Virus record (IMG/VR): IMGVR_UViG_3300031933_000215
Span: 1 to 64,000 of that record
DNA length: 64,000 nucleotides
Strand: one strand, 5' to 3'
In this document: positions 2,996-62,676 of the stretch, piece by piece
Numbering within the stretch: the stretch's first letter is position 1
Layout: the number at the start of each line of letters is the position of its first letter
The notes under the pieces: generated by a model
Seen by the model: only the letters and a program-made list of their open reading frames with translations
What the model was told of the DNA's origin: nothing
The model's database searches: none
Made by a program: the position numbers and the translations under genes

Positions 2996-3232
2996 TTGAT
3001 ACAGCCTTAATGATAAAGCATTTTTGGTGGTTAAGGGAAAAAATACGGCGACACGCCTTTTGAAGGATGCCGCCTGAAGAATTCGTCTGTTCGAGTTTCC
3101 TTAGGAGTACCCTTGAGCCGCTCGAACATATAATTGGCTCAAACTCATCCCATCAGGACGGGAGGTAGAATTTTACCAATGGAGTCAATAACATGTCATA
3201 TTGACTATACTTTAATGAGGAGGGAACAGCCC

Positions 3233-4093
3233 ATGGAAAACGTTCATTGTATCTACCATGCCAACTGCACCGACGGCTTTACCGCCGCTTGGGTAGTGAG
3301 TCAGCGTTACCCGAACGCGGTCCTGCACGCAGCCGCTTACGGTCAACCGGTACCGATCATCCCAAAAGACGCGGTAGTCTACATAGTAGATTTTTCGTAC
3401 GACCTTCACGAGCTGGTGGCCCTGGCTCAAGTGTGTAAGTCGGTTCATGTTCTGGATCATCACATCTCTGCTGTCCGCAAACTGAAGGATAAGGTGGCAG
3501 AGTCACACGACGTGTTTCAACTGCCTGATAACCTTGAGTTGTATCTGGATATTGAACGGTCGGGAGCTCGTTTGGCATGGGATTATTTCTTCCCCCGAGA
3601 GGACGAACTGCCCGATCTGGTACGGTACGTTGAGGACCGGGACCTTTGGAAATTCAAGTATGAGGACAACACCCGTAACTACGTCCGGGCACTGATGGCA
3701 CGTCCATTCAGTATCGACGCTTATACCGAGGTCCACGAAACCAAGACGCAGAAGATTCTCGACGAAGGCGAAGTGTTGACGACCAGTGACGAGCGTCACA
3801 TCGAATGGCACCTTCAAGAAGCCACTCGTATGGTGACATTTGAAGGCGTGAAGACCCCGCTGGTCAACGCACCCAAATACTTGGTATCCGAGATCACACA
3901 CCGTCTGGTAAAAGAACACCCGATCGTTCTGGCGTACCATGATTCACCGGATGGTCGCGTTTTCCGAGTCACGACGGACTCCGAGCGTTCCGGTTTCGAC
4001 GCCTCCCGTATTGCGGAACAGTACGGTGGTGGGGGACACACTGATGCCGCTGGGTTCATCGTGCCCAGCAACCACACACTTCACCAACTGTAA
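3233..4093 (+). CDS. DHH/DHHA1 family phosphoesterase (NrnA/NrnB-like)
   Basis: YHANCTDG, IVDFS, LDHH and C-terminal GGGGHTDAAGF motifs; GAGGAGG RBS before ATG 3233. Confidence 0.85.
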   Translation: MENVHCIYHANCTDGFTAAWVVSQRYPNAVLHAAAYGQPVPIIPKDAVVYIVDFSYDLHELVALAQVCKSVHVLDHHISAVRKLKDKVAESHDVFQLPDNLELYLDIERSGARLAWDYFFPREDELPDLVRYVEDRDLWKFKYEDNTRNYVRALMARPFSIDAYTEVHETKTQKILDEGEVLTTSDERHIEWHLQEATRMVTFEGVKTPLVNAPKYLVSEITHRLVKEHPIVLAYHDSPDGRVFRVTTDSERSGFDASRIAEQYGGGGHTDAAGFIVPSNHTLHQL

Positions 4094-4102
4094 GGGTTGT
4101 TC

Positions 4103-4435
4103 ATGAAAGGGCTTTATTCCAACCGAAACGATTTCCACGCCGTCCGCTGGTATAAGAACGGCGACCACCCCAACGACAACTCGGAATGGATATCCGGAGA
4201 TGGCGATGACCGTTTCTTGAGTGAAGGTCACGTGGTGCGTTATTACCGTGACCCCAGGGTTGCTTCTGACACCAAGTGTCAGAAATGCGGTCACATCATG
4301 CATGACCACGGATTCATCGATGCCGGTGAAGACGGTGCGGTGGTGTGTCCTGGCGACTGGATAATCAATTGCGAAGAAGAAGTCTACAAAGTAATGAGTC
4401 CTGACGAGTTCCAAACCTTCATTGACGAGTATTAA
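4103..4435 (+). CDS. Hypothetical phage protein with CxxC/HxH putative metal site
   Basis: ORF with KCQKCGHIMHDHG and VCPGDWII; follows the DHH gene closely. Confidence 0.7.
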   Translation: MKGLYSNRNDFHAVRWYKNGDHPNDNSEWISGDGDDRFLSEGHVVRYYRDPRVASDTKCQKCGHIMHDHGFIDAGEDGAVVCPGDWIINCEEEVYKVMSPDEFQTFIDEY

Positions 4436-4747: not shown

Positions 4748-4790
4748 ACGGCATAGGAGCCTCCCATAGCGGGAGGCTCTTTTTTTTTCG
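4748..4790. terminator. Bidirectional terminator between convergent genes
   Basis: GAGCCTCCC ATAGC GGGAGGCTC hairpin; T-run on +, CTATGCCGT tail on -. Confidence 0.8.
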
Positions 4791-6965
4791 TTAAAACACG
4801 AAACCCACCTGAGGCATTCGACTTTGGCGAGCGTGTCGATTGAGTTTGTTCTTACGACTGCGCGTCTCATGTGCCTGTTTGATCATCGCGTCGATGGAAT
4901 TACCCATACTCTCTTGGATGTCAAACCGGCCTGACAATTGCTTCAGGCGCATCTCCAATTTGGAAATGGTCATTGGATCGTTCGCGACTTTCAGTTCCTC
5001 CATTAACCGGTTGAACTCGTTCATGTATTCTTTCTGTTGGTTATGGCGGTGCACCTCGGTCTTGGACATCTTAACCTTGTCAATCTCCGTGTCGGAGAAG
5101 ACTTTGGTGGCGTCGATGCCGTAAACGTCCAAGTGTTTCGCCTTGGTGCAGAACCAGTGAGCCAACAAGAAAGACACCACCATGTCGTCGTGGTTCCCTT
5201 GCGAGTGGTCAATCCGTCCGTTACGGATAGTCAACGACAGGATCTCATTGATCAACGTCTTATCGTAGATCCGCTTTCCGCCCAGACGAATGGCCGATTT
5301 CAAAGCAGCACCGTAAAGGTTATCCCGAGAGTGGGCCCCGGACCCGGAGGTGTTGAAACCGAAATACCGCTTGAACCGGTCGTAGAAATACGAGGGTCTT
5401 GCGTTAACCGGACGTTGGATTTCCTTCCATTCGGTACTGTACTTGTTCGGATCGTCCACGATTAGGTTGTAGATCCGTTTGAACGGGTCCACGCCTTCCA
5501 CTGTTAAGTGAATGATCATGGTGTCCAGGATAGCCATACCACTGGACTTTCGCTCAGGCACGAACGTGATGTTGGGGAAACGGATCAACAACTTCGCCAG
5601 CCATTTCGAGAACCGGCTGAGGTTCGTCTCGTTGTATCGGCCGGTGCAGATGACGTCGTGGGTGTAGGCATCGATGATGACCAGACCTGTGGCATCGTTC
5701 TCGGCACCAAGTGCGTCACTGGGATCGTTGCCGGCCACAAACTTACTGGACGCCATCCGACTTTCAATCTCGTGTTCCGGGATGTACCAACGAATGGTGT
5801 ACCCTTCCTCGGAGATGTCCATGTAATCGATTTCACGTTCCGAGCTTTTGACTGCTTCTTTCTCTTCCGTGTTCAGTGGTGACCCTTCGTTACCGGTGGT
5901 CCAAATGTTCAGGTAATCCCGGTCGGCGATTTCACCTTCGGATGCGGATTCCCGAAGTTTCTGGAACAGCCATTGATCGGTCTTACCCAGTTGACGATGG
6001 TTGAACGCGCCGTAGATCAACGGCTTTACGCCAGAGGATGCCAAATCCACAACCCGCTCCAACTCGGCCTGGTTCTTCAGATCGAAGTACCGTTCGTCCC
6101 AAATGGCACCGCCGGTTAGGAACCGGTAAGCGTAACCACCATCCCGGGAATTGATCTTACCTGCGGTTGTGGTGTATACGTTACCGTAAGGTTGGTTCAC
6201 CGACGCCGCTTCTTCCCGAGCGGCCGAACCGGAGGACAGGGCAACGGGTAGAGAGATCTCAATGAGGTTGATGTACGCCAGCTCATCGAAGTGCATGATA
6301 GGCACGGTCAGACCCCGGCCCAGTTTGTCGGCGGCGATCTTGTCGTTACGACCCACCGACGTCTTGTAGCGATTGCCGAGTTTGTGGTTGGTGATGATTT
6401 CACTGTTGTCGGCATCGATGCGGTTGGGGTAATAAATGTAATCGGGGAGCAGGGCCCGGATTTCTTTGAGGCGTTCAACGTTGTTGTTACGAAGCGCCAA
6501 ATCCTTAGTGATCAGGTTAATGGTCGTGTTACTGGCCCAGATGTCCTTCAGTCCGGTAAACAACACGTCCGCTGAGACCGACTTACCGGTCTGTCGGGGT
6601 TGGAGCAATCCAAAATCCACGTGGTTAAAGAACGACCAATACATGGCGATGTTGCCACGGTTCGCACGGAAGCGTACCGGGACCGTACCGGCGTTTGGTG
6701 GTAGTCGGGCTACTTCACGGAAGAAGTACCATGCGTTGTAGCGACACTCCATACTGATTTTGAATTTGGTTTCTTGTGAGAGGTCGGGATCGAATGGGTC
6801 GACGCCCACTAGGTCGGGTTGATACAACGCCAAGATGAATTCGGCGTTTTCAACCCCCATGTTCTTGTACAGGAACACCAACCGTTTGAACGATTCGTTG
6901 GTTGTGTTGTAGTCAACAATCGCCGTCGGGTAGTCATTCCAATCGTCTTTGAAGAGTATCGTCAT
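4791..6965 (-). CDS. terL: Terminase large subunit (phiKZ gp25-like)
   Basis: Walker A LLQPRQTGKS, Walker B MHFDELAY, nuclease domain AGNDPS...FVPERKS...HDDMVVS; position next to the tail genes matches phiKZ. Confidence 0.9.
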   Translation of the reverse strand: MTILFKDDWNDYPTAIVDYNTTNESFKRLVFLYKNMGVENAEFILALYQPDLVGVDPFDPDLSQETKFKISMECRYNAWYFFREVARLPPNAGTVPVRFRANRGNIAMYWSFFNHVDFGLLQPRQTGKSVSADVLFTGLKDIWASNTTINLITKDLALRNNNVERLKEIRALLPDYIYYPNRIDADNSEIITNHKLGNRYKTSVGRNDKIAADKLGRGLTVPIMHFDELAYINLIEISLPVALSSGSAAREEAASVNQPYGNVYTTTAGKINSRDGGYAYRFLTGGAIWDERYFDLKNQAELERVVDLASSGVKPLIYGAFNHRQLGKTDQWLFQKLRESASEGEIADRDYLNIWTTGNEGSPLNTEEKEAVKSSEREIDYMDISEEGYTIRWYIPEHEIESRMASSKFVAGNDPSDALGAENDATGLVIIDAYTHDVICTGRYNETNLSRFSKWLAKLLIRFPNITFVPERKSSGMAILDTMIIHLTVEGVDPFKRIYNLIVDDPNKYSTEWKEIQRPVNARPSYFYDRFKRYFGFNTSGSGAHSRDNLYGAALKSAIRLGGKRIYDKTLINEILSLTIRNGRIDHSQGNHDDMVVSFLLAHWFCTKAKHLDVYGIDATKVFSDTEIDKVKMSKTEVHRHNQQKEYMNEFNRLMEELKVANDPMTISKLEMRLKQLSGRFDIQESMGNSIDAMIKQAHETRSRKNKLNRHARQSRMPQVGFVF

Positions 6966-7470: not shown

Positions 7471-7522
7471 CCGACATAGTGCCTCCCCAAAAGGGGAGGC
7501 GGCTATGCTTATTTTTTTTTTG
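7471..7522. terminator. Bidirectional terminator
   Basis: GCCTCCCC AAAA GGGGAGGC hairpin flanked by CCGACATAG and CTATGCTT plus a T-run. Confidence 0.8.
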
Positions 7523-16899: not shown

Positions 16900-16950
16900 C
16901 GACATAAGAGGAGGGATAGTCCCTCCTCGATTTATGTTTTTTTTTTTATT
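16899..16950. terminator. Bidirectional terminator
   Basis: GAGGAGGGA TAG TCCCTCCTC hairpin; ACGACATAA on the left, TTTATGTTTTT on the right. Confidence 0.8.
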
Positions 16951-22628: not shown

Positions 22629-22667
22629 ACGACATAAAGGTGGGGTTTCGGCCCCACCTTTTTTTAT
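22629..22667. terminator. Terminator after phuZ
   Basis: AAAGGTGGGG TTTCGG CCCCACCTTT followed by a T-run; ACGACATA on the 5' side. Confidence 0.85.
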
Positions 22668-22678
22668 TTGGAGATTTG

Positions 22679-23188
22679 ATGATGGCCAAGAAGTCAAAGC
22701 ACGATGGTCTTGACGCGTTATTGGCCAAGGAGTTGGGGCTGGAACTACAGACGCAGACATTGCCGTTGAAGAAAGTGCAGACCATGGTCAAAGAAGCCAA
22801 CGGTTTGTATTTCGCCTTTGTGATCGATGGTTATTACTACTACGATACGGTTGAGTCGTGGGCTGGTAGTTTGGGTTGTCGTGTAAAACCCAAGCGGTTC
22901 TTGTTGGAGCCCCGCGTTCGTCAGCGACTGGAACAGCGTCATTACCTCCGATGGTACTTCCACTATGGAACGGCGTTGTATCGGGTACAGATTGCCAAAC
23001 CCAAAGACCTGTTCGATCGCTTGTGGTTTCAACCATGCGACGACAACCCACGGTCGACCAACGTTCTCATTGAGGTTGAATCCATGTTTCTGCGAAAGAA
23101 ACCATTGATGCAACTGCGTGAATCGAAACTGCCTTGGTACGATATTCCTGATCACTGGGAACCTGTAGAAATGAAAAAGCGAGCATAG
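22679..23188 (+). CDS. Hypothetical protein
   Basis: GGAG RBS; followed by a hairpin plus TATGCCGT. Confidence 0.65.
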   Translation: MMAKKSKHDGLDALLAKELGLELQTQTLPLKKVQTMVKEANGLYFAFVIDGYYYYDTVESWAGSLGCRVKPKRFLLEPRVRQRLEQRHYLRWYFHYGTALYRVQIAKPKDLFDRLWFQPCDDNPRSTNVLIEVESMFLRKKPLMQLRESKLPWYDIPDHWEPVEMKKRA

Positions 23189-39396: not shown

Positions 39397-39487
39397 CATG
39401 CGGCGGTGGGGACCATACCCACCGCTTTCCTATTTTTTTTTTAGTCCACGGAAGGATAGTATGGTAACCCGCAAAGGAGAAACAGTC

Positions 39488-49060: not shown

Positions 49061-50239
49061 ATGACCGAACGAAACCGTAAAGAGATTGGGGTGGATATGC
49101 TTGGCGTGAACGCCATGGACCCCTACTTCCAAAATTCATCAGGTCCCCGGAAGGCAATGTTCTCCACCCAGATCGGTCAGGCCCCGATCGTGGATGGTAA
49201 TACCCCACGCCGGATCTTCACTGGCGTGGAAACCAAATACGCCGACGACACGTTTGATGTGTCACTACCTTGCCACGCAACCATTTTGAAAGTCATTCAC
49301 AAGTTCCCTATCGGCATGGGTCGGGACGTCATTCGGCATAACCCCACCACCGTGGTGATCTACGAAGATTACTACGACCCACATAAGACCATTGGGGTGT
49401 TGGAAGTCAACGATTTCATGTCACTACACCAGGACTTCGGGTTCCGCATGGAGAAAGATCCGGAAGTGTGGAACGAACTGGGTCCGCGTGTGATGATGGA
49501 GAAAGGGACGCGTCTGGCCAAATCCCCAGCGGTCCGTGAGAACGGTCAGTATGGGATTGGATTGGAAGCAGAAGTGGCGTTCATGTCCATGCCTGGTACC
49601 ATCGAGGATGGGTTCGTGGTGTCCCGGACGTTCCTGGAACGGATGACGCCCCGAACCTACAACACGGCCGTAGGTAATTGGGGGCGGAAAGCGTTCCCGT
49701 TGAACCTTTATGGAGACGACGAGCACTATAAGCCGTTCCCGGACATTGGCGATACCATCCGGGACGACGGATTAGTGTTTGCTCTGCGGGAGATCGATGA
49801 CGATCTTGGCGTGGCAGAGATGACCCCGCGTGCCCTGCGGGAAGTGGACTACGCGTTCGACAAACCATTCTTCGGGAAACCCGGGGCCAAGATCGTGGAT
49901 GTCAATGTCTACCACGATGACCGACTGAACCCGTCCAGTACGCCGGTCGGTATGGACACCCAAGCTCGGAAGTACTACGACGCTCAGGTGGTGTTCTACC
50001 AATCACTGATGGACGAGTATAATCGCTTGGCTAAACGGCGCGGTAAGCGTCTGTGCATCACTCCCGAGTTTAACCGTTTGTTGGTGGAAGCTCAGATGTT
50101 CCTGCCAGTGGCAGGGGACCGCCGTAAGCTGACCCGGATGTACCGTCTGGAGCAACTTGACGAATGGCGTGTGGAGGTGACCTACGAGAAACGCTTGGAA
50201 TCCAACATGGGTTACAAGTTCACTGACATGCATGGTGGT
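49061..50239 (+). CDS. Non-virion RNAP beta subunit C-terminal part, exon 1 (phiKZ gp71-73-like)
   Basis: RKAMFSTQIGQ, VAFMSMPGTIEDGFVVS; ends at GYKFTDMHGG, the first half of the GDKxxxRHGNKG motif. Confidence 0.9.
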
Positions 50240-51584
50240 AATTAATTTGTGAGGGTTCATCTATCTCCAGCAATATTAGGAGGTAAGATGAAAAAGAGTA
50301 AAGAGTTTAGACGCATTCCCGGATATGATCAATACGCTGTCAGTAAAGACGGTGTGGTGAAGTCCGTGGTTAGAGATATTGTACTCAGCCAATACCTTTT
50401 AGATGGGTATTTGATTGTAGACACGTTCCGTGGATCAAAAACGGAAACCCTACCTGTCCATAGAGCCGTTGCGTTGGCATGGGTTGAAAACCCAAACCCT
50501 GAGAAGTTTACAGTGGTCAACCACAAAGACGGCGATCGGACAAACAATTGGTACGAGAACCTTGAGTGGACTGACTACTCAGGGAACAACTACCACGCCA
50601 TTAATAGTGGTCTGCGCAACGACAACATTCCTTGTCGCATCCGGGATTTCGAAACCGGCGAGATAACGGAATTCAGTTCTATGGCACAGGCAGCAGTGGC
50701 GATGGGTTTACGGGCATGTGAACCGTACAGTATCTTAAGACCAAAGATGTTCGGGAAGTTAGTTGCCGATAAATACGAGCTTCGGTTTAAAGACGAACCA
50801 ACACCCTGGTTCTACGAAAATCGAACCGAGCGAGTTAAGCCTTCACGTTACATGGTTATTGTAACGGAAGAGGACGGTAGCAGTCGGGAAATCTTCTCGA
50901 CGCGTGCTCTCCTTAAAGAGTATCAACTCTACGACAGCCCAATGAAATCAATCCCGGAGCTGGCGAAGTTTGGGAATCAGAAATACCCAAACAAAGAGTT
51001 CAAGGTACTTGACAGTTACTCCGGGGATCTTTACCGGGTTACGCGTCAAACCAAAGAGAGCCGTAAGCTACCTGTCCTGGCACGTAATCCAGATGGGGAT
51101 ATGCATTTCGACTCTTTGACTCAATGTGCCAAACACTTCGGTGTTGATCGTTCCGTCATTCACAATCGACTTGATAAGCAAATAGATTTGGATGGATGGA
51201 CCTTCACAAGAAATATTGCCCCTTCAGTCCTTGATGGCTGAAGGAGTCTCCTTTAACTGACGGGAACGCCCTGAGAGCCTCATACACCAACTACATCGGT
51301 GGAAACACATGTAGGGCCAGTCTAATCAGCTGGACGGTAAAAGAGATGAGGATTGGGTGATCCGCAGCCAAGCTCCTACGGATCGCTGTGAAGCGAGCTA
51401 CGGAGAAGGTTCAACGACTAACCGTTCACCACGGTGTACCCGCCAAGCGGCGTCGGCTAATTACCGGTTAATAGGGAAATGGGGAGCCTCTCATTGAGGG
51501 GAAGATATAGTCTGGTCCTTGGGGAAACTCAAGGCGGGTGTCATTGCACACCGGGTACAAGTAGCGATTGTACTGGACAAAACG
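50240..51584 (+). mobile_element. Group I self-splicing intron in the nvRNAP beta gene
   Basis: Exon ends in U and intron ends in G; core elements GTGATCCGCAGCC (Q-like), GGTTCAACGACTA (R), GAAGATATAGTCT (S); splicing restores in-frame MHGG|KGVVC. Confidence 0.88.
50288..51241 (+). CDS. Intron-encoded HNH homing endonuclease (NUMOD4 + HNH_3 + C-terminal DNA-binding repeats)
   Basis: RRIPGYDQYAVSKDGVVKS; VHRAVALAW...VNHKDGDRTNNWYENLEW; GGAGG RBS. Confidence 0.9.
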   Translation: MKKSKEFRRIPGYDQYAVSKDGVVKSVVRDIVLSQYLLDGYLIVDTFRGSKTETLPVHRAVALAWVENPNPEKFTVVNHKDGDRTNNWYENLEWTDYSGNNYHAINSGLRNDNIPCRIRDFETGEITEFSSMAQAAVAMGLRACEPYSILRPKMFGKLVADKYELRFKDEPTPWFYENRTERVKPSRYMVIVTEEDGSSREIFSTRALLKEYQLYDSPMKSIPELAKFGNQKYPNKEFKVLDSYSGDLYRVTRQTKESRKLPVLARNPDGDMHFDSLTQCAKHFGVDRSVIHNRLDKQIDLDGWTFTRNIAPSVLDG

Positions 51585-52541
51585 AAAGGCGTCGTCTGTA
51601 AGATAATGGAGGACGCCGACATGCCTGTGGATGAGAACGGCAACCGAGCCGACGTGGTCATCTATGGCATCTCCACAGTTAAACGGATGAACTTTGGTCG
51701 CTTCTACGAACAGTTCATCAACGCTGCCAGTCGGGACCTACTACACAAAGTCCGTCGTCAGGCGGGTCTGAAACACAACGTCAAACCCACCGCCTATCAG
51801 TTGGCTACGGTCAAACAGAATACGGAGGTAGTGGAGTCCATTTGGCAACAACTGATGGGTTACTACGAGATCGTGGCCCCACTGCAACAGGACCTATTGA
51901 TTGACGACCCAGACCACTGGCGTCATGTAGAAGCGGTGCTGATGGACGAGGGGACCTGGCACGATGGAATCTACCTGTGGGTTCCGCCCGATAACCCGGT
52001 CAACAACCTAGCGATGGCAAAGGAGTTACGCGACAGTGAGTTCTGCCCGCACTATGGCCCGGTGACCTATCGGGACAACGCGGGTAAAATGGTGACCACG
52101 GTGGACCCCACATTGATCGGTACGCTGTACATGATCATGTTGGAGAAAACCGGGGAAGACTGGTCTGGGGTGGCTTCGGTGAAAACCAACCACTTCGGGG
52201 TACCGGCCAAGCTCAATAACTACGACAAACAAACCGCACCGGGACGGCAGGCACCGGTTCGAGCGCTGGGCGAGTCCGAGACCCGTTCGTACATCTCCAC
52301 GGTAGGTCCAGAAGCCACCATGGAGTTGTTGGACCAGTCAAACAACCACACCACCCACAGCCATGCCGTGGAGACAATCCTCAAAGCACCCAAGCCAACC
52401 AACATCGACAAGGTGGTGGATCGGAAGAAGGTGCCGTTTGGTGGTTCACGTCCGGTGGCACTGGTGCAACACGTGCTGAACTGCCGTGGCATCAAGTTTG
52501 TCTACCGACCAGACACGGAAGGCAGTGGGAACCAACTGTAA
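51585..52541 (+). CDS. Non-virion RNAP beta subunit C-terminal part, exon 2
   Basis: KGVVCKIM, DMPVDENGNRADVV, KRMNFGRFYEQ, RALGESE match beta conserved regions H and I. Confidence 0.9.
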   Translation, partial: KGVVCKIMEDADMPVDENGNRADVVIYGISTVKRMNFGRFYEQFINAASRDLLHKVRRQAGLKHNVKPTAYQLATVKQNTEVVESIWQQLMGYYEIVAPLQQDLLIDDPDHWRHVEAVLMDEGTWHDGIYLWVPPDNPVNNLAMAKELRDSEFCPHYGPVTYRDNAGKMVTTVDPTLIGTLYMIMLEKTGEDWSGVASVKTNHFGVPAKLNNYDKQTAPGRQAPVRALGESETRSYISTVGPEATMELLDQSNNHTTHSHAVETILKAPKPTNIDKVVDRKKVPFGGSRPVALVQHVLNCRGIKFVYRPDTEGSGNQL

Positions 52542-54536: not shown

Positions 54537-54585
54537 CCACGGAGGACGGGGGAGGGTGACAGCTCCCCCGTTGTTGTACCCAACA

Positions 54586-57153
54586 ATGAAATCATTACTG
54601 ACGCTCGACGTTTATTCTCACGGGGTCCGCATCAGTGGATACACCCGTGAGACCTTTCGTATCATTGCTGTTTTTTTGGAACGACTGGCGCTAAAAGAAC
54701 CACGCCACATTCCACAGGAACGGCGAATGGTCATGGAACTGAAGAAACGGTTCTACGGCCTAACCGATTCCCGCAAGGAATCTTTCATCCACCGCTACCA
54801 GCTTGAAGAGTTTCTGCTCTACTTGAAAGACCGTGGATTGGAAGGGCGATTTGAGATCAACCATATCGACGCCCCGGTACCCACCCCAGCCACGTTTGAT
54901 ATTTACGATCACTATGAAACCCGTGGATACCAGATTCCCATCGTTGAGTTCATGACCACCCCCGATAAGCGCTCTTGCCGCCTGGACCTCCAGACCGGCA
55001 AGGGGAAGGCCGAGACACTCTATTCTCGAATTAAAGTGCCTGGTGGTTGGTCTACAATGGGTGAGATGGAGGTTGGTACGAAAGTCACAGCATGGGATGG
55101 AACCACCACCCATGTAACGGGAGTATACCCACAGGGAACCACTCCCGTTTATAGGGTAACGTTTTGGGACGGACGTCATGTTGATGTTTGTCCTGAGCAT
55201 CTCTGGAAAGCGTTCTATGTGAACACTGTACCCCATAGACGGTGGCGGGTTATTGATACCTTGGAACTCAAAAGACTAAGTGAAATGCCCAATCCACGGG
55301 TATATGTTCCTTTGTGTCAATCCGAAGACGGCCCTGAGGTTGATGTCACAATACCGCCATACACACTGGGCGTACTTATTGGAGACGGTAACCTAACCGG
55401 AACCGGTATAAATATATTCAAACCAGATAACGAGCTGTTCGAAAATATTAGGGAGGAATTATTACCGGGTCACGAGTTACGCGACTCTCTAAAGAAGCCG
55501 GGTTTACGTTCCTTGGTAAATGCCAACGGAGGTGAAAACCTATACCGTCGCTACCTCAAAGAAATGGACATTGACGGAACCTATTCTTGGGAAAAATACA
55601 TTCCCCAGAATTACCTCCACGGATCTACGGAACAACGGTGGGCATTACTACAGGGATTGATGGACACAGACGGGACAGTCAACACCAGAGAAACCGGTGG
55701 GGCTGTGTCGTTTAACTCCACCAGTCGTCGTTTGGCGGGGCAAGTTCAATACCTTGTGCGTTCTCTTGGCGGTATTGCCTCAATCAGTGAACGCAATACA
55801 CAATACACATACAACGGAGAAAAATGTCAGGGACGTAAGTCTTACGATGTTAACATCCGTCACCCGAAACAACGAAAACTATTCCGCCTACCACGGAAGT
55901 TAGAACGTATACCTGAAACTAACCAATATTCGGAGGATTTAAAACTCAGAGTTCGTTCGGTTGAATACCTTGGTGAGGAACCAACTCAATGCATTTCAAT
56001 CGATCATCCGGAGCGCCTGTATGTAACCAATGACTTCATTGTGACACACAACACCTATTGCGCCTTACGGTCGGTGGCCACCCTGGGCGTTCGGACGGTG
56101 GTGATGGTGTCGCCCAAATACTTCGGCATTTGGGAAAAAGCCCTGAAAGAAACCTACAAAGACATAGATGGACGTTACTGTACGGTTTCCGGTTCCGCCG
56201 AGTTGCGGGCGTTGATTGAGAAGGGCGTGGAAGGAGACCTGGACTACGATGTGATCATTGTCTCCAACGTAACCTACCGCAGCTACCTGGAATCGTACGA
56301 GCGGTTCGGTGAGGCGATCACCAGCATCGGCTATTTGGTCCCGCCCCCACGGTTTCATGAAGCCTTGGGCGCTGGGGTGCAAATCAACGATGAGTTCCAA
56401 GACGACCCCGGTCTGGTGTTCCGCACGGATGTTTACACGAATGTCAGAAAACAGTTGTACTTGTCCGCCACGCCATTCACTGGGAACGAGTTCGTCACCC
56501 GCATGATCGACGTGATGCTCCCCAAAGAGACGTCCTGTCCCTTGCCGGAATACGACCAGTACATCAATGTGATCGGACTGATGTACCACGACCCGGACGT
56601 TAAACGCAAAGACTACCTGACGCCCTTTAAGAACACCTACAATCACACCCGGTACGAGAAACGCCTGCTCAAAGCCAAGCGTCGATTGGAACGGTACAAG
56701 CGGATGGTGTTCAAGGTCATCAACGGCATTTACATCAAAGACCGGGAACCGGGCCAGAAGCTACTGGTTCTGTGCGCCACGGTGGACTTCATCAAACACC
56801 TGACCAAGGAGTTGAAGCTGAAGTACCCCGACTTGACCATCGGTGAGTTCGTGGCGGGGTCCAACCCCAAGACGCTGCAAACCAACGACATCACGGTGTC
56901 GACCATCAAGTCGGCCGGGACCGGTCAAGACATCATTGACTTAAGAGAAGTACTGCTGCTGCAAGCAACGGATTCCAAGAAGGACAACATCCAAATCCTG
57001 GGCCGTCTGAGACGCATGAAAAACTGGCCAGAACACACACCACGCATGACGTATATGGTGTGTATGGACATCCCACAGCAGATTCGTTACTTCAAAAATA
57101 AGAAGGGTCATTTCGATGGACGCGTCGTGTCCCATCGGGTGATGCGTATCTAG
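54586..57153 (+). CDS. SF2 (UvsW-like) helicase precursor containing an intein (phiKZ gp75-like)
   Basis: Walker A LQTGKGK|T split by the intein; QINDEF, LYLSATP, SAGTGQDI, QILGRLRR motifs. Confidence 0.88.
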   Translation: MKSLLTLDVYSHGVRISGYTRETFRIIAVFLERLALKEPRHIPQERRMVMELKKRFYGLTDSRKESFIHRYQLEEFLLYLKDRGLEGRFEINHIDAPVPTPATFDIYDHYETRGYQIPIVEFMTTPDKRSCRLDLQTGKGKAETLYSRIKVPGGWSTMGEMEVGTKVTAWDGTTTHVTGVYPQGTTPVYRVTFWDGRHVDVCPEHLWKAFYVNTVPHRRWRVIDTLELKRLSEMPNPRVYVPLCQSEDGPEVDVTIPPYTLGVLIGDGNLTGTGINIFKPDNELFENIREELLPGHELRDSLKKPGLRSLVNANGGENLYRRYLKEMDIDGTYSWEKYIPQNYLHGSTEQRWALLQGLMDTDGTVNTRETGGAVSFNSTSRRLAGQVQYLVRSLGGIASISERNTQYTYNGEKCQGRKSYDVNIRHPKQRKLFRLPRKLERIPETNQYSEDLKLRVRSVEYLGEEPTQCISIDHPERLYVTNDFIVTHNTYCALRSVATLGVRTVVMVSPKYFGIWEKALKETYKDIDGRYCTVSGSAELRALIEKGVEGDLDYDVIIVSNVTYRSYLESYERFGEAITSIGYLVPPPRFHEALGAGVQINDEFQDDPGLVFRTDVYTNVRKQLYLSATPFTGNEFVTRMIDVMLPKETSCPLPEYDQYINVIGLMYHDPDVKRKDYLTPFKNTYNHTRYEKRLLKAKRRLERYKRMVFKVINGIYIKDREPGQKLLVLCATVDFIKHLTKELKLKYPDLTIGEFVAGSNPKTLQTNDITVSTIKSAGTGQDIIDLREVLLLQATDSKKDNIQILGRLRRMKNWPEHTPRMTYMVCMDIPQQIRYFKNKKGHFDGRVVSHRVMRI
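55009..56052 (+). mobile_element. Class 3 intein (348 aa) with LAGLIDADG endonuclease
   Basis: Starts with Ala (AETLYSRIK), ends in THN before Thr; WCT triad in EHLW, TQCISI and VTHN; LGVLIGDG and LQGLMDTDG motifs; lower GC than flanks. Confidence 0.9.
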
Positions 57154-59888: not shown

Positions 59889-59970
59889 AAGGCACCCTTC
59901 GGGGTGCCGTCTATGCCCTTTCTTTTTTTTTTGGTCAACGACATAAAGCCCGCCCCGAAGGGCGGGTGTT
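59889..59970. terminator. Back-to-back terminators of convergent genes
   Basis: GGCACCC TTCG GGGTGCC then CTATGCCC and a T-run on +; CCCGCCC CGAA GGGCGGG then CTTTATGTCGT on -. Confidence 0.8.
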
Positions 59971-60488
59971 TAATCGTCACTGTTAGTGAAGTCCAAATCC
60001 AGTTGACGCTGCACACTGCGGTGGGTGTTCTCTTGCTGCGTGGCATCGGCTTGAGAGATGTCGTACAGCAAGTCCACGACGTACGGCGGTAGGTCCAAGA
60101 ACTCAGACAGCGACAAACCAAACTGTTTGCGGATCTGGTAATTGTAGTAACGTCGAATGTGGCTGAACAGCATGCTACCTTCCATGGCATCCTCTTTGGG
60201 ATGCATGGCCACCAACGCCAGCGGCTTGTGGGGATGGGGCTTCTCATGATCGAAGATCCCATACTCGGTTTGGTAACACGACAGGGTGATGATCTCAGCG
60301 GCCGTGGCACGGACCGCTGGGAGTTCGCGCAGCAACGCATCGATTTGGCCGGTGCTGTTTAGTTGATGCAACCCAAAGCTGGAGAACGCCACGTGCCCGT
60401 TCGCGTCGTCAAGATCGAGCGTTAGACGACTGAAACGGGCGTCCGTGTTGGTCTCCGGGTCTAGCTGTGCTTCAGGCTGACCAACGTA
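59970..60488 (-). CDS. Predicted -1 frameshift extension (gpGT-like tail assembly chaperone C-terminal part)
   Basis: The frame is open from just upstream of the T7 slippery run to the stop at 59970; no good RBS at the GTG 60392; FGLSLSEFLDLP helical motif. Confidence 0.65.
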   Translation of the reverse strand, partial: YVGQPEAQLDPETNTDARFSRLTLDLDDANGHVAFSSFGLHQLNSTGQIDALLRELPAVRATAAEIITLSCYQTEYGIFDHEKPHPHKPLALVAMHPKEDAMEGSMLFSHIRRYYNYQIRKQFGLSLSEFLDLPPYVVDLLYDISQADATQQENTHRSVQRQLDLDFTNSDD

Positions 60489-62161
60489 AAAAAAGTGGTA
60501 AGAACATCAAGGGGAACCAGATGCTCAAACCGCTCCTTAAACTTCTCAGCGACCGGGGTCTGACATTTGGGACAGTTGAACGATGGGATGGCAATCATGC
60601 TGATGAGGCTGTCGTCCATGTAACGATTCACCTCACCGAAGAACGTGTCCACGAACTCGTCGGTGGAGAAGATGTGGTTCAACGTTTCATTGATCACATC
60701 GGTGTCTTCCGACACCAGTTCTTCGTTGCCGTCCTCGTCCTTCTCGTGGATCGAGGTAACCCAATGGCTGTACTGACGGGCCGTGGTGGCCATCCCCAGA
60801 CGGGTGATGTACTGATCCCGGTTACTGCCGTGAGGTGGTTCGTTGAATGCCCCTTGGGTCATTTCGATGATACCGTTTATCCATGCCTGACCGGAGTCCT
60901 CATACTCCTGAATGCTTGGGACTTTCAGGGTCACCCCCAACTCGCCAAACCAGACCAGTCGTTGCCCGCCCCGAGTGTGTTCGGTCAGATACAGGCGCTG
61001 CTCATCGTCGGTCATCTTGGTGAATTTCCGAGCCATCAGTTTCTTCTGACCTTGGGTCAGTGAGGTACTGTCGGTCCAGTACAGGCGGTTGAGGTTCAGT
61101 GTTTCCTTAGTGACGTGTTGGCACTTCTCCACATCTGCCAGACACGGATGGGCATATGGGAACCCTTTCGGGTACAACGTCACCGCCAAACCCCAGAGTA
61201 CCATGGGGGCGTCCAACAACAGGATCTTTTCCTTCAGGTCACTTGGCGTTGTGTAATGCACGTTGCTGTCAATGACATACTGGAGTGCGAAGTCCAGTGC
61301 TGCCGACATCAACACCTGGGCGGTGTTGGAGAACGCCATGCCCTTACTGTCCGCACCCAGCGTCACCTTGATCTGCTGTAGCTCGTATTGCAAACCGGTG
61401 ATAGCTGACAGTGGTGGTGTCTTCATTCGCAGCCAAACGCCACTGTGCCACAGCGGCACATCAAATACGGTACCCACACCGGCTCGCCGAGCCAGGTAGG
61501 TCATGGTCTCCTCGCGACTGTGGTGGGTACCACCCAACTTCTGTTTGGGTTGACCCGGACGCAAGCCTTGACCTTCGTGATCCAGGATCTGTTGCCAGTC
61601 ACTACCTTCCCGTGCCAGACTGTTCTCGCCAAATCCGTTGAGTTGGGCGTAGGTCAGTGCGTTCATCGCCGTACGGAACCAAGCATTGCCTTCGTTGTCC
61701 GCAACCTCCCGGCCTTGCTTGGTGGCTTTCCTCTCCAGTTCCTCTTCCCGCGCGTTAATGTTTTCCAACATAGTCGTGGAACGGTCGAGAACCTGACTTA
61801 CCGTGCTGTAAGCTTCCCGGAAGACAGTCAGGATGTCAGTCAGCGCCGGGTCGGTAGTCAATTCCCCAGTAGTTTTCAGTTTCTCTTCAAACTGGTGGTA
61901 CGGCTGGTCGGGCACGAACGCATCGGTGGCCTCATCTTCGGGCTCTTCGTCACCCTCATTGCTGGGGTCGTTCCCGGTATCGGCTTCGCCTTCCTCGGTG
62001 GTTTCCTGTGTTGGGTGGTCGTGGTCTTCAGGCTCGGTGTTCAGAGCCATGTCTTCAGGCTCCGGCTCGCCGAACCGCCCCTGAAACTCTTCGGGAGTGG
62101 GTTGGGTATCGGACGACTCGTTGTTGACGTTCGGATTTTCGTTAGAATCGTTCTGATCCAT
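60461..62161 (-). CDS. Conserved phiKZ-like protein, probable tail/baseplate assembly chaperone (gpG-like)
   Basis: Acidic disordered N-terminus, C-terminal CPKC, and a slippery site 8 codons before the stop. Confidence 0.6.
   Translation of the reverse strand: MDQNDSNENPNVNNESSDTQPTPEEFQGRFGEPEPEDMALNTEPEDHDHPTQETTEEGEADTGNDPSNEGDEEPEDEATDAFVPDQPYHQFEEKLKTTGELTTDPALTDILTVFREAYSTVSQVLDRSTTMLENINAREEELERKATKQGREVADNEGNAWFRTAMNALTYAQLNGFGENSLAREGSDWQQILDHEGQGLRPGQPKQKLGGTHHSREETMTYLARRAGVGTVFDVPLWHSGVWLRMKTPPLSAITGLQYELQQIKVTLGADSKGMAFSNTAQVLMSAALDFALQYVIDSNVHYTTPSDLKEKILLLDAPMVLWGLAVTLYPKGFPYAHPCLADVEKCQHVTKETLNLNRLYWTDSTSLTQGQKKLMARKFTKMTDDEQRLYLTEHTRGGQRLVWFGELGVTLKVPSIQEYEDSGQAWINGIIEMTQGAFNEPPHGSNRDQYITRLGMATTARQYSHWVTSIHEKDEDGNEELVSEDTDVINETLNHIFSTDEFVDTFFGEVNRYMDDSLISMIAIPSFNCPKCQTPVAEKFKERFEHLVPLDVLTTFFTLVSLKHS
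60488..60494 (-). other. Predicted -1 ribosomal slippery heptamer T TTT TTT
   Basis: ACT TTT TTT in the reading frame of 60461..62161, followed after 5 nt by a bulged hairpin. Confidence 0.65.
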
Positions 62162-62163
62162 TG

Positions 62164-62676
62164 TTAAGCCTCTTCCGTTGCAGGGGTGAGTTCCAGCATG
62201 TCACCGTGTTGCTCACGAATGACTTCAATCAGTGAAAGAATCAGCGGGGCAATAACCGTTTCGAAATGCGTTTCCAGGTTACTATATTCCATGCTGATTG
62301 AGAACATCACCGGCCAATCTTTCTCAGGCGGTACGCCCGAACGCCCTGCGTGTTTCTGATGGAGCGCGTCCAGGTTTTCTTTGTACTGTTTGATGTCACC
62401 AAGCAGTGTGTTGAAGCAACGAGAGAAACCGTCGGGGTCGTCCAGCTTCTCTTTCAGAGTGTCGAGCTGGTTCATGACTGGCAAGGTGAATCCCTGCGTG
62501 TGCAGAAGCTTCTTGGCACATTGGTGATACATCTGGTTAAGGACTTCCCAACCGGTTTCCGACTTCAATACAGCGTCGGCAACTACGCGTTGTGTTGCCT
62601 CGATATCTTCCTTGGTCAGGTCAACATCTTGTACATCAGCCGGTGCTTCATTAAGGTTCTTTTCGTTGGAAGACAT
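62164..62676 (-). CDS. Hypothetical helical protein
   Basis: ORF ends 2 nt before the next gene start (GAGG RBS inside its end). Confidence 0.65.
   Translation of the reverse strand: MSSNEKNLNEAPADVQDVDLTKEDIEATQRVVADAVLKSETGWEVLNQMYHQCAKKLLHTQGFTLPVMNQLDTLKEKLDDPDGFSRCFNTLLGDIKQYKENLDALHQKHAGRSGVPPEKDWPVMFSISMEYSNLETHFETVIAPLILSLIEVIREQHGDMLELTPATEEA

What the first reader, a model, noticed from the sequence alone, without database searches (positions are those of the whole stretch)
59970..62161. Predicted -1 programmed ribosomal frameshift fusing two conserved genes (lambda G/GT-like) in a phiKZ-type phage
Near the end of the 566 aa ORF the minus strand reads ACC ACT TTT TTT ACG, a T TTT TTT heptamer in the correct X XXY YYZ phase (60494-60488). 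The -1 frame has a TGA only four codons earlier, then stays open through YVGQPEAQLDPETNTDARFSRLTLDLDDANGHV straight into the next ORF, whose GTG has no clear RBS. A bulged stem GGTC-AG-C-CTG-AAGCA-CAG-CT-A-GACC starts 5 nt after the heptamer. The products would be 566 aa and about 730 aa. This is the layout of tail assembly chaperones in long-tailed phages. I do not recall it being described for this gene pair in nucleus-forming jumbo phages, and here it is not visibly beside a tape measure gene.
Basis: partly seen in the sequence, partly recalled or inferred. Interest (0 to 1): 0.8.

Follow-up and report, generated by a model that had tools for sequence, protein, structure and literature searches.

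The report
Conserved frameshift in jumbo-phage core gene
A core gene of nucleus-forming jumbo phages (the phiKZ gp77 family) almost certainly makes a short and a long protein by a ribosome slip on a run of T's, and this arrangement is kept in every relative examined but is joined in none of the 14 GenBank records inspected and was not found in the literature searched.

Summary
On the minus strand a 566-aa ORF (62161-60461) carries T_TTT_TTT (60494-60488) in X_XXY_YYZ phase. The -1 frame runs open from there for 172 codons to 59970, which would give a 730-aa fusion.

Comparison makes chance very unlikely. All 82 complete orthologous loci (76 unique sequences, 45 clusters at 50% identity, from phiKZ to SPN3US, Goslar and RAY) keep three things:
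- an in-phase T-run of 5-8 bases;
- a 0-frame stop 8-37 codons later;
- a -1 extension of 150-195 codons.

The slip-site Phe codon is TTT in 68 of 68 cases, against 39% of Phe codons elsewhere. The -1 linker has no stop in 3420 codons, against 283 in the third frame. A conserved extension motif (HV....FG) often lies upstream of any start codon. No in-frame fused version exists among 199 family proteins. Contigs of four metagenome runs confirm T7.

Function is inferred only. Fold and language-model searches, but not sequence profiles, link the body to T4 gp26/gp51 baseplate-hub assembly chaperones. That makes a G/GT-like chaperone pair plausible, although the gene is not next to tail genes.

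Papers found by the searches do not describe this frameshift.

The parts
60461..62161 (-). 0-frame ORF, 566 aa including the TAG stop. It is the ortholog of phiKZ gp077, 201phi2-1 gp136, Goslar gp081, RAY gp267 and chimallivirus core gene cg18. This is the short product.
   Evidence: 37% identity to phiKZ gp077; phrog_4585, E 4e-138; cg18 table; AlphaFold2 model with pLDDT 80 and pTM 0.78.
61931..62161 (-). N-terminal acidic, predicted disordered region (residues 1-77). It varies in length among orthologs.
   Evidence: pLDDT below 50 for residues 1-77. In one search, alignments to relatives start at residue 46 or later.
60488..60494 (-). Slippery heptamer T_TTT_TTT (0-frame codons AC[T TTT TTT], Phe557-Phe558). 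This is the proposed site of the -1 tandem slip of tRNA-Phe.
   Evidence: An in-phase T-run is kept in 82 of 82 complete orthologous loci. The P-site codon is TTT in 68 of 68 cases.
59970..60488 (-). -1 frame extension: 172 codons plus the TAA stop, read after the slip. With residues 1-558 it would give a 730-aa long product. It contains the ORF listed as 59970-60392 (GTG start).
   Evidence: tblastn aligns from residue 1 in relatives; phrog_12109; alignment A2.
60354..60488 (-). Linker part of the extension (extension residues 1-45): low-confidence, Pro/Glu/Asp-rich, ending in the conserved HV....FG motif. In this window codons 1-32 lie upstream of the first possible start codon.
   Evidence: pLDDT 40-58 over the first 50 residues; motif at residue 31, first start at codon 32; no stops in the -1 frame in 76 unique loci; excess of synonymous changes.
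59973..60353 (-). Folded helical C-terminal domain of the long product (extension residues 46-172). It ends in a long helix with pLDDT above 95.
   Evidence: Conserved columns YGI..H, PL..VA.H..ED and EFL.LP in A2. No match in the PDB.
60461..60487 (-). Dual-coding tail. The 0 frame reads TLVSLKHS then stop (end of the last helix of the short product). The -1 frame reads YVGQPEAQL. It is the most nucleotide-conserved stretch of the locus.
   Evidence: In one search, short contigs of related phages lay only on about 60469-60524.
59949..59966 (-). G+C-rich hairpin followed by a T-rich tail, directly after the TAA of the extension. It is a likely transcript end for the operon.
   Evidence: 7 pairs, all G-C; sequence.
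62164..62676 (-). Upstream co-oriented gene (170 aa), ortholog of phiKZ gp078. It sits directly upstream in all annotated relatives and is probably in the same operon. Function unknown.
   Evidence: phrog_14050, E 2.5e-35; synteny; the Atlas search was uninformative.

Best explanation
The gp77-family gene of this chimallivirus is expressed as two proteins from one start codon.

Most ribosomes read the 0 frame and stop at TAG 60463-60461, which gives a 566-aa protein. A fraction slip back one base on T_TTT_TTT (60494-60488), with tRNA-Phe re-pairing on UUU. These ribosomes continue in the -1 frame for 172 more codons and give a 730-aa protein. The long form carries the same body, then a flexible linker of about 45 residues, then a helical C-terminal domain.

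What is shown: the sequence arrangement, and its strict conservation with selection acting at the nucleotide level. What is inferred: that the slip is ribosomal, and how efficient it is. No stimulatory RNA structure or upstream Shine-Dalgarno-like element was found, so the slippery run may act alone or with an unknown stimulator.

Function is an inference of middling confidence (about 0.45). The body resembles T4 gp26/gp51-type baseplate-hub assembly chaperones in predicted fold. On that basis the pair would work like the G/GT (lambda) or E/E+E' (P2) tail assembly chaperones: a fixed ratio of a short form and a long form, where the extra domain of the long form recruits another tail or baseplate component during assembly.
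For: 1. Anatomy in the window.

2. Conservation of the arrangement.
- 15 of 15 named genomes and 82 of 82 complete loci (45 clusters at 50% identity and 19 at 40%) keep an in-phase T-run. Run lengths are 5 (16 loci), 6 (13), 7 (41) and 8 (12).
- All have a 0-frame stop 8-37 codons later and a -1 extension of 150-195 codons.

3. Selection at the nucleotide level.
- The P-site Phe codon is TTT in 68 of 68 cases, against 39% TTT elsewhere in the same ORFs and 0 of 15 to 0 of 18 in G+C-rich ones (p = 1.6e-28).
- The base before it is T in 56 of 76 cases, against a 29% third-position T frequency (p = 1e-15).

4. The -1 frame is kept open and coding.
- There are 0 stops in 3420 linker codons, against 283 in the third frame.
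- In the part of the linker that has no start codon and no overlap, 68 codon differences are synonymous and 63 are not (p = 4e-11 against 25% synonymous).

5. Independent initiation cannot explain the conserved N-terminal part of the extension.
- tblastn aligns from extension residue 1.
- The HV....FG motif lies upstream of the first ATG/GTG/TTG in many genomes. In phiKZ the motif is at codon 30 and the first start at codon 85; in L037 they are at 17 and 136.
- The Val codon of the motif is GTG in only 14 of 61 cases.

6. No family member is fused in frame. Among 199 proteins, including the best 150 of 1730 cluster representatives, all stop 8-34 residues after the Phe motif.

7. The T7 run is not an assembly error.

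8. Function lead.
- Foldseek against BFVD gives E-values from 9e-5 to 4e-3 to several 'Baseplate hub assembly protein, T4-like' or 'baseplate hub subunit' models.
- In the ESM Atlas, 51 of the 100 nearest clusters carry PF12322, and one structural match has TM 0.53.
- NCBI names T4 gp26 'gp26 family baseplate hub assembly chaperone'.
- Both families share a C-terminal AVP-x-CPxCG...FFxLL end and a 2+2 cysteine pattern.
- One family member hits phrog_150 'baseplate hub' at E = 0.004.
Against: - No protein, ribosome-profiling or RNA evidence was available, because every sequencing run found was DNA.
- No conserved downstream hairpin or pseudoknot was found: mean z = -0.43 over 75 sequences, and consensus energy -1.1 kcal/mol with no covariation.
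- There is no enrichment of SD-like motifs upstream (11 of 76 against 6 of 76 in a control window). The usual bacterial stimulators are therefore missing.
- About a quarter of the unique sites are not perfect X_XXY_YYZ heptamers (N_TTT_TTY, N_CTT_TTT, G_GTT_TTT).
- The two Phe residues are also conserved as amino acids, so phase conservation is partly confounded with protein conservation.
- The functional assignment has several weaknesses. There is no Pfam match. Profile-profile comparisons with T4 gp26/gp51 are not significant. No PDB fold match was found. The gene lies among RNA polymerase, helicase and head genes, not tail genes.
Confidence: 0.8

Rival explanations
1. Transcriptional slippage. 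The phage (or host) RNA polymerase stutters on the T-run and adds one U to some mRNAs, and normal translation of those mRNAs gives the same 730-aa fusion. The ribosome does not slip.
For: - The site is a homopolymer, and 53 of 82 loci have runs of 7-8 T.
- No ribosomal stimulator (hairpin or SD) was found.
- From general knowledge: chimalliviruses transcribe with their own unusual multisubunit RNA polymerases, whose slippage behaviour has not been described to my knowledge.
Against: - 16 of 82 loci have only T5 and 13 have T6. From general knowledge, that is shorter than the runs known to give useful polymerase slippage.
- The 3' edge of the run is fixed in phase. The run is lengthened only on the 5' side, at the wobble base of the preceding codon (56 of 76), which is what an X_XXY_YYZ heptamer needs.
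- Variant sites (G_GTT_TTT, N_CTT_TTT) still allow an A-site tRNA-Phe slip. From memory, the phage T7 gene 10 site G_GUU_UUC is of this kind.
Confidence: 0.1
2. Two ordinary genes. The downstream ORF is translated on its own (here from GTG 60392), the T-run only encodes a conserved Phe-Phe, and the frame relation is an accident of shared descent.
For: - Gene callers and 14 GenBank records annotate two separate CDS.
- A start codon exists somewhere in the -1 frame in almost every genome.
- The Phe-Phe pair is conserved as protein.
Against: - The extension is conserved as protein from its first residue.
- The HV....FG motif lies upstream of the first possible start in many genomes, and annotated starts are scattered between codons 2 and 143.
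- The linker has no stop in 3420 codons, against 283 in the other frame.
- TTT is chosen in 68 of 68 cases against the local codon preference.
- The -1 relation holds in 45 clusters at 50% identity.
- Synonymous changes are in excess in the start-free linker.
Confidence: 0.06
3. Artefact or decay. A homopolymer sequencing or assembly error, or a recent frameshift mutation, split a single 730-aa gene in this metagenomic contig.
For: The window is a metagenome-assembled viral contig (IMG/VR UViG_3300031933_000215), and the break is at a homopolymer.
Against: - Contigs of four runs from two kinds of environment span the run with no gaps.
- The same split is present in 82 of 82 loci, including cultured and independently sequenced phages.
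- No unsplit version exists among 199 family proteins.
Confidence: 0.01

Closest known systems
Tail assembly chaperone pairs made by -1 frameshifting: lambda gpG/gpGT and P2 gpE/gpE+E' (general knowledge: Xu, Hendrix and Duda 2004; Christie et al. 2002, cited from memory)
   Same: - Both products share an N-terminal body, with a short 0-frame form and a long -1 form.
- The slip is near the 3' end of the upstream ORF on a homopolymeric or near-homopolymeric heptamer. From memory, the P2 site is T_TTT_TTG.
- The arrangement is conserved across very divergent phages while the sequences diverge.
- The ESM Atlas puts P2 GpE and 'tail assembly chaperone GT' clusters among the nearest named neighbours of the extension. 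Scores are 0.80-0.82, which makes this a lead only.
- Foldseek gives weak hits of the body to two tail assembly chaperones, at E = 0.07 and 0.3.
   Different: - The body is 566 aa with an alpha/beta fold and a four-cysteine site, not a helical protein of about 100-150 aa.
- It matches no Pfam chaperone family.
- The gene is not upstream of a tape-measure gene. It lies between head and RNA-polymerase genes and a helicase.
- No binding data exist.
T4 gp26 / gp51 (Pfam PF12322 T4_baseplate; NCBI name 'gp26 family baseplate hub assembly chaperone')
   Same: - Predicted fold similarity: Foldseek E from 9e-5 to 4e-3 to several family members, and Atlas TM 0.53 with 51 of the 100 nearest clusters carrying PF12322.
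- Both have a 2+2 cysteine pattern, and both end in CPxCG...FFxLL.
- From general knowledge, T4 gene 26 also makes two products, though by an internal start: 26' is annotated.
   Different: - No significant sequence or profile match.
- The chimallivirus protein is more than twice as long, with an acidic disordered N-terminus and a helical insertion.
- T4 gene 26 ends with TTC TTT GAG and has no slippery run and no -1 extension.
- T4 genes 26 and 51 sit inside the baseplate gene cluster.
Phage T7 gene 10A/10B capsid frameshift (general knowledge, from memory)
   Same: It is a -1 slip of tRNA-Phe on a U-rich site (G_GUU_UUC) near the end of a phage structural gene, and it adds a C-terminal extension to a minority product. 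The variants G_GTT_TTT and N_CTT_TTT seen here are of that type.
   Different: It concerns a different protein, and its extension is short rather than a separate folded domain.

Membership tests
-1 programmed ribosomal frameshift site (tandem-slippage type) | Slippery heptamer X_XXY_YYZ in the 0-frame phase | tested here: met
   The window has T_TTT_TTT at 60494-60488 in phase. By my count of the table, about 56 of the 76 unique orthologous sites are perfect heptamers; the rest are N_TTT_TTY, N_CTT_TTT or G_GTT_TTT.
-1 programmed ribosomal frameshift site (tandem-slippage type) | The 0 frame stops soon after the site, and the -1 frame is open from the site into a long coding region | tested here: met
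   In the window the 0-frame stop is 8 codons later and the -1 frame is open for 172 codons. This holds in 82 of 82 loci. The -1 linker has no stops, against 283 in the third frame.
-1 programmed ribosomal frameshift site (tandem-slippage type) | The site and frame relation are conserved in orthologs beyond what protein coding requires | tested here: met
   TTT is used in 68 of 68 cases against 39% elsewhere. A wobble T precedes it in 56 of 76 cases against 29%. The arrangement is kept in 45 clusters at 50% identity.
-1 programmed ribosomal frameshift site (tandem-slippage type) | Stimulatory element: a downstream hairpin or pseudoknot 5-9 nt after the site, or an upstream SD-like sequence | tested here: not met
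   Downstream folds are no more stable than shuffles (mean z = -0.43). The consensus fold shows no covariation. SD-like motifs occur in 11 of 76 sites against 6 of 76 control windows. Pseudoknots and long-range pairings were not searched.
-1 programmed ribosomal frameshift site (tandem-slippage type) | Trans-frame protein demonstrated | not testable with these tools
   Only DNA metagenome runs hold this sequence. No proteomic data were accessible.
G/GT-type tail assembly chaperone | Two products sharing an N-terminus, produced by a -1 frameshift | tested here: met
   Shown in silico only.
G/GT-type tail assembly chaperone | Gene pair lies directly upstream of the tape-measure gene in the tail module | tested here: not met
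   The neighbours are gp78-like, gp79-like (head), helicase and RNA polymerase subunit genes.
G/GT-type tail assembly chaperone | Sequence or fold membership in a known chaperone family | tested here: not met
   There is no Pfam hit. Only weak leads exist: Foldseek E = 0.07 and 0.3 to two chaperones, and Atlas 0.80-0.82 for the extension.
G/GT-type tail assembly chaperone | Binds the tape-measure protein (short part) and the tube protein (extension), and is absent from virions | not testable with these tools
   Only indirect evidence: the phiKZ and 201phi2-1 records do not mark gp77/gp136 as virion proteins, while their neighbours are so marked.
T4 gp26/gp51 baseplate hub assembly chaperone (PF12322) | Significant match to the PF12322 profile | tested here: not met
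   None of 34 members hits PF12322 even at E = 10. hhalign probabilities are 1-15%. T4 gp26 and gp51 themselves score 4e-52 to 9e-64.
T4 gp26/gp51 baseplate hub assembly chaperone (PF12322) | Same fold | tested here: inconclusive
   Foldseek against BFVD gives E from 9e-5 to 4e-3, probability about 1.0, and target-normalised TM 0.39-0.54 for at least 7 family models. The Atlas gives TM 0.53. Both sides are predictions and no solved structure exists.
T4 gp26/gp51 baseplate hub assembly chaperone (PF12322) | Required for baseplate hub assembly | not testable with these tools
   This needs phage genetics and electron microscopy.

The most novel reading that the evidence does not exclude
The gp77 / gp77-76.4 pair is the so far unrecognised tail or baseplate assembly chaperone of nucleus-forming jumbo phages. 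It would be an evolutionary bridge showing that T4 gp26/gp51-type hub chaperones and G/GT-type frameshifted chaperones are one ancient system. Its frameshift would work without any RNA stimulator, and so might be tuned by the phage's own modification of host ribosomes.
Probability: 0.3. Interest if true: 0.8.

Novelty: new member of a known kind. Interest (0 to 1): 0.62.

Why it matters
- This gene is core gene cg18 of the Chimalliviridae and is still listed as hypothetical. Its downstream partner is annotated inconsistently: 81 aa in phiKZ, and an overlapping upstream start in RAY.
- If the frameshift is real, every chimallivirus genome annotation misses a protein of about 700-730 aa. The core gene set gains a conserved domain. 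Proteomic, Tn-seq and knock-out data for the two 'genes' need to be read as one unit with two products.
- The site offers a clean natural test case of -1 frameshifting on a bare U-run. It is present in more than 1700 sequence clusters and in tractable model phages (phiKZ, PhiPA3, 201phi2-1, Goslar, RAY, SPN3US).
- It gives a testable lead to how the large tails of these phages are assembled.

Tried and rejected
- **Near-identical DNA in GenBank phages:** none. The window is a metagenomic phage, IMG/VR UViG_3300031933_000215.
- **Pfam:** nothing for either piece, or for any of 34 family members.
- **PDB by sequence profile:** nothing.
- **PDB by fold:** nothing for the body or for the extension (only villin-headpiece noise).
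- **Profile-profile comparison with T4 gp26 and gp51:** not significant in four set-ups. Only the shared C-terminal motif stands out.
rejected.
- **Upstream SD-like stimulator:** no enrichment.
- **The conserved Val of the HV motif as a hidden GTG start:** rejected, since GTG is used in only 14 of 61 cases.
- **In-frame fused homologs ('Rosetta stone'):** none among 199 proteins. The longer proteins only have longer N-termini.
- **RNA evidence:** no RNA run holds the sequence.
- **gp78-like neighbour:** the Atlas search was uninformative.
- **Literature:** ten searches and five papers read gave no description of this frameshift. 'gp136' hits referred to the PhiPA3 capsid protein, not to 201phi2-1 gp136. 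The search for the E. coli slippery-motif survey found nothing in the library, so slip-site efficiencies are not quoted.
Full report
**1. Observation.** On the minus strand an ATG at 62161 opens a 566-aa ORF that ends with TAG at 60463-60461. Nine codons before the stop the sequence reads ACC ACT TTT TTT ACG. Counting codons from the ATG puts T_TTT_TTT (60494-60488) in X_XXY_YYZ phase. The -1 frame has a TGA four codons before the first Phe. It is then open through FFYVGQPEAQLDPETNTDARFSRLTLDLDDANGHV... for 172 codons to the TAA at 59972-59970. It includes the mechanically listed ORF 59970-60392, which has a GTG start. A slip would give 558 + 172 = 730 aa.

A T7 run by itself is not rare in this window. 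There are 38 overlapping matches against 10 expected, mostly intergenic. The case therefore rests on comparison with relatives.

**2. Identity.**
- No phage in GenBank is close at the DNA level.
- The window is IMG/VR contig UViG_3300031933_000215, and a second contig is identical here.
- The 566-aa protein is the ortholog of phiKZ gp077 at 37% identity, with 238 phage records matching. It belongs to phrog_4585.
- It is core gene cg18 of the nucleus-forming phage family, listed there as 'hypothetical protein' (Goslar gp081, phiKZ gp077, RAY gp267; supplement of PMC10299810).
- Neighbouring genes follow the phiKZ order: RNA polymerase subunits, a helicase and small genes on one side, and gp78-like and gp79-like genes on the other.

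**3. Comparative test.** The -1 peptide, searched on its own, aligns from its first residue in Noxifer, PA1C, Psa21, PhiPA3, Phabio, 201phi2-1 and phiKZ. In each case the match spans the end of the gp77 gene and the next small gene.

I read the junction in 14 named genomes. These were the seven above plus RAY, Goslar, SPN3US, RP31, FLC9, FLC8 and pVa-21. I also read it in 69 IMG/VR loci.
- All 82 complete loci have an in-phase T-run of length 5 (16 loci), 6 (13), 7 (41) or 8 (12).
- All have a 0-frame stop 8-37 codons later and a -1 extension of 150-195 codons.
- The loci fall into 45 single-linkage clusters at 50% identity and 19 at 40%.
- None of the 14 GenBank records joins the two CDS.

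**4. Selection is on the nucleotides, not only on Phe-Phe.**
- In 76 unique sequences the P-site codon is TTT in all 68 Phe-Phe cases. TTT makes up only 39% of the other Phe codons of these same ORFs, and 0 of 15 to 0 of 18 in G+C-rich genomes (p = 1.6e-28).
- The preceding wobble base is T in 56 of 76 cases, against a mean third-position T frequency of 29% (p = 1e-15). The amino acid there varies (Thr, Val, Leu, Ala, Ile, Tyr, Ser, Asn and others).
- The remaining sites (N_TTT_TTY, N_CTT_TTT, G_GTT_TTT) still let an A-site tRNA-Phe move from UUY to UUU.

**5. The -1 frame is translated from the slip site.**
- The first 45 codons after the site contain no stop in the -1 frame in any of 76 unique sequences (3420 codons). 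The third frame has 283 stops over the same bases.
- The extension aligns as a protein family (A2, 53 sequences). It has a variable Pro/Glu-rich linker, a conserved HV....FG motif and a helical domain with the motifs YGI..H, PL..VA.H..ED and EFL.LP.
- The first possible start codon is scattered between codons 2 and 143, and it often lies after the HV....FG motif. In phiKZ the motif is at codon 30 and the first start at codon 85. In L037 they are at 17 and 136, and in L031 at 17 and 70.
- The Val of the motif is GTG in only 14 of 61 cases.
- In the part of the linker that neither overlaps the 0-frame ORF nor follows a start codon, 18 close pairs show 68 synonymous and 63 non-synonymous codon differences. 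That is far more synonymous change than in non-coding sequence (p = 4e-11 against 25%).

**6. No unsplit version exists.** The 60 homologs from the word-indexed search and the best 150 of 1730 cluster representatives from the exhaustive search all end 8-34 residues after the Phe motif. None reaches 680 aa, and the longer ones have longer N-termini.

**7. Not an assembly error.** Contigs of four DNA metagenome runs span the run with no gaps. Two runs are from gas-well or subsurface samples and may be the source of the window. Two are from freshwater samples. Short contigs of other, related phages lay only on about 60469-60524. That fits this dual-coding stretch being the most conserved DNA of the locus.

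**8. Stimulators.**
- A consensus fold of 14 of the closer relatives has -1.1 kcal/mol and no covariation.
- SD-like motifs 4-18 nt upstream are not enriched.
- Pseudoknots and long-range pairings were not examined.

**9. Mechanism and rivals.**
- The best reading is a -1 ribosomal slip on the U-run.
- Transcriptional slippage would give the same protein and cannot be excluded without RNA data. However, T5 and T6 runs in 29 of 82 loci, the fixed 3' edge of the run, and its extension only at the 5' wobble base all fit a heptamer better. I give it 0.1.
- Separate initiation alone (0.06) and artefact (0.01) are contradicted by sections 3-7.

**10. What the protein may do.**
- AlphaFold2 gives a confident model of the body: pLDDT 80, pTM 0.78, with residues 1-77 disordered.
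- The extension models as a linker of about 45 low-confidence residues plus a helical domain.
- Neither model matches a solved structure.
- Against predicted viral structures, the body first matches its orthologs. It then matches several 'Baseplate hub assembly protein, bacteriophage T4-like' and 'baseplate hub subunit' models, with E from 9e-5 to 4e-3. It matches two tail assembly chaperones weakly.
- In the ESM Atlas, 51 of the 100 nearest clusters carry PF12322 (score 0.91, 198 shared features), and one structural match has TM 0.53.
- T4 gp26 and gp51 are the founding members of PF12322. NCBI names gp26 a 'baseplate hub assembly chaperone'.
- Both families have a 2+2 cysteine pattern and end in CPxCG...FFxLL. 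SPN3US even reads CPACGKTH against T4 CPECGKTH.
- Sequence-profile tests are nevertheless not significant, so membership is not established.
- For the extension, the nearest named Atlas clusters are P2 GpE and 'tail assembly chaperone GT'. Their scores of 0.80-0.82 are often reached by chance.
- T4 gene 26 itself has no slippery run.

I therefore propose, at about 0.45, that the pair acts as an assembly chaperone in two forms. It would work like G/GT without being a demonstrated member of that family. It fails the location, size and sequence criteria.

**11. Literature.** Ten searches and five papers read gave no description of a frameshift in this gene or in Chimalliviridae. These included the core-genome paper, a 2025 review of nucleus-forming phages and a 2025 Tn-seq preprint. 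The library lacks most subscription journals, so prior description elsewhere cannot be ruled out.

**12. Verdict.** The stem-loop is not supported, and the function is only a lead. This is a new, family-wide instance of a known recoding mechanism in a core gene of a much-studied phage group. Interest is 0.62.

Noticed in passing
window 49061-52538 (+): The RNA polymerase beta-subunit gene (phrog_3295) appears split. ORF 49061-50242 matches profile positions 5-403 and ORF 51519-52538 matches positions 403-694. An HNH endonuclease ORF (50249-51238) lies between them. This may be a homing-endonuclease insertion or an intron-like element.
   Followed up: no
L001 (phiKZ) 4809-5051; L008 (RAY) 2880-3428: Annotation of the downstream partner is inconsistent. 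phiKZ 076.4 is called as only 81 aa from an ATG at extension codon 85, which cuts off the conserved HV....FG part. RAY gp266 is called from an upstream start that overlaps gp267 by 136 nt.
   Followed up: partly
window 60469-60524: Short contigs from other, related phages in the metagenome runs lay only on this stretch at 85% likeness. Summed depth peaks there, at 42 against 18 in run X3. This marks the slip-site and dual-coding region as the most conserved DNA of the locus.
   Followed up: partly
window, whole; e.g. 46-55, 4780-4788, 7512-7521, 16937-16947, 39433-39442, 59923-59932: Runs of 7 or more T are over-represented (38 overlapping matches against 10 expected). Nearly all are on the + strand at what look like intergenic positions, so they may be terminator tails or promoter elements.
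   Followed up: no
window 59891-59966: Two G+C-rich hairpins sit between the convergent gene sets: CCCGCCC-TTCG-GGGCGGG at 59966-59949 and GGCACCC-CGAA-GGGTGCC at 59908-59891. An A/T run lies between them. This looks like a bidirectional terminator region.
   Followed up: partly
window 61103-61144 and 60563-60574 (residues C340, C347, C530, C533): Four nearly invariant cysteines (HPC..D..KC and NCPKC) suggest a zinc site tying the middle of the protein to its C-terminus. The Burkholderia and Ralstonia phage branch (FLC9, RP31, FLC8) has lost the C-terminal CxxC.
   Followed up: partly
window 54671-54677 (+) and 22659-22665 (+): Two further T7 runs lie inside long ORFs: the 865-aa helicase-like ORF 54556-57153 and ORF 22640-23188. 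Both are near the listed starts of these ORFs. They were not examined for phase or conservation.
   Followed up: no
L084 (T4) 3803-4429: T4 gene 26, the possible distant relative, also gives two products, but by an internal start (26', annotated at 3803-4090). Its last codons TTC TTT GAG TTA CTA TAA overlap the ATG of gene 25.
   Followed up: partly
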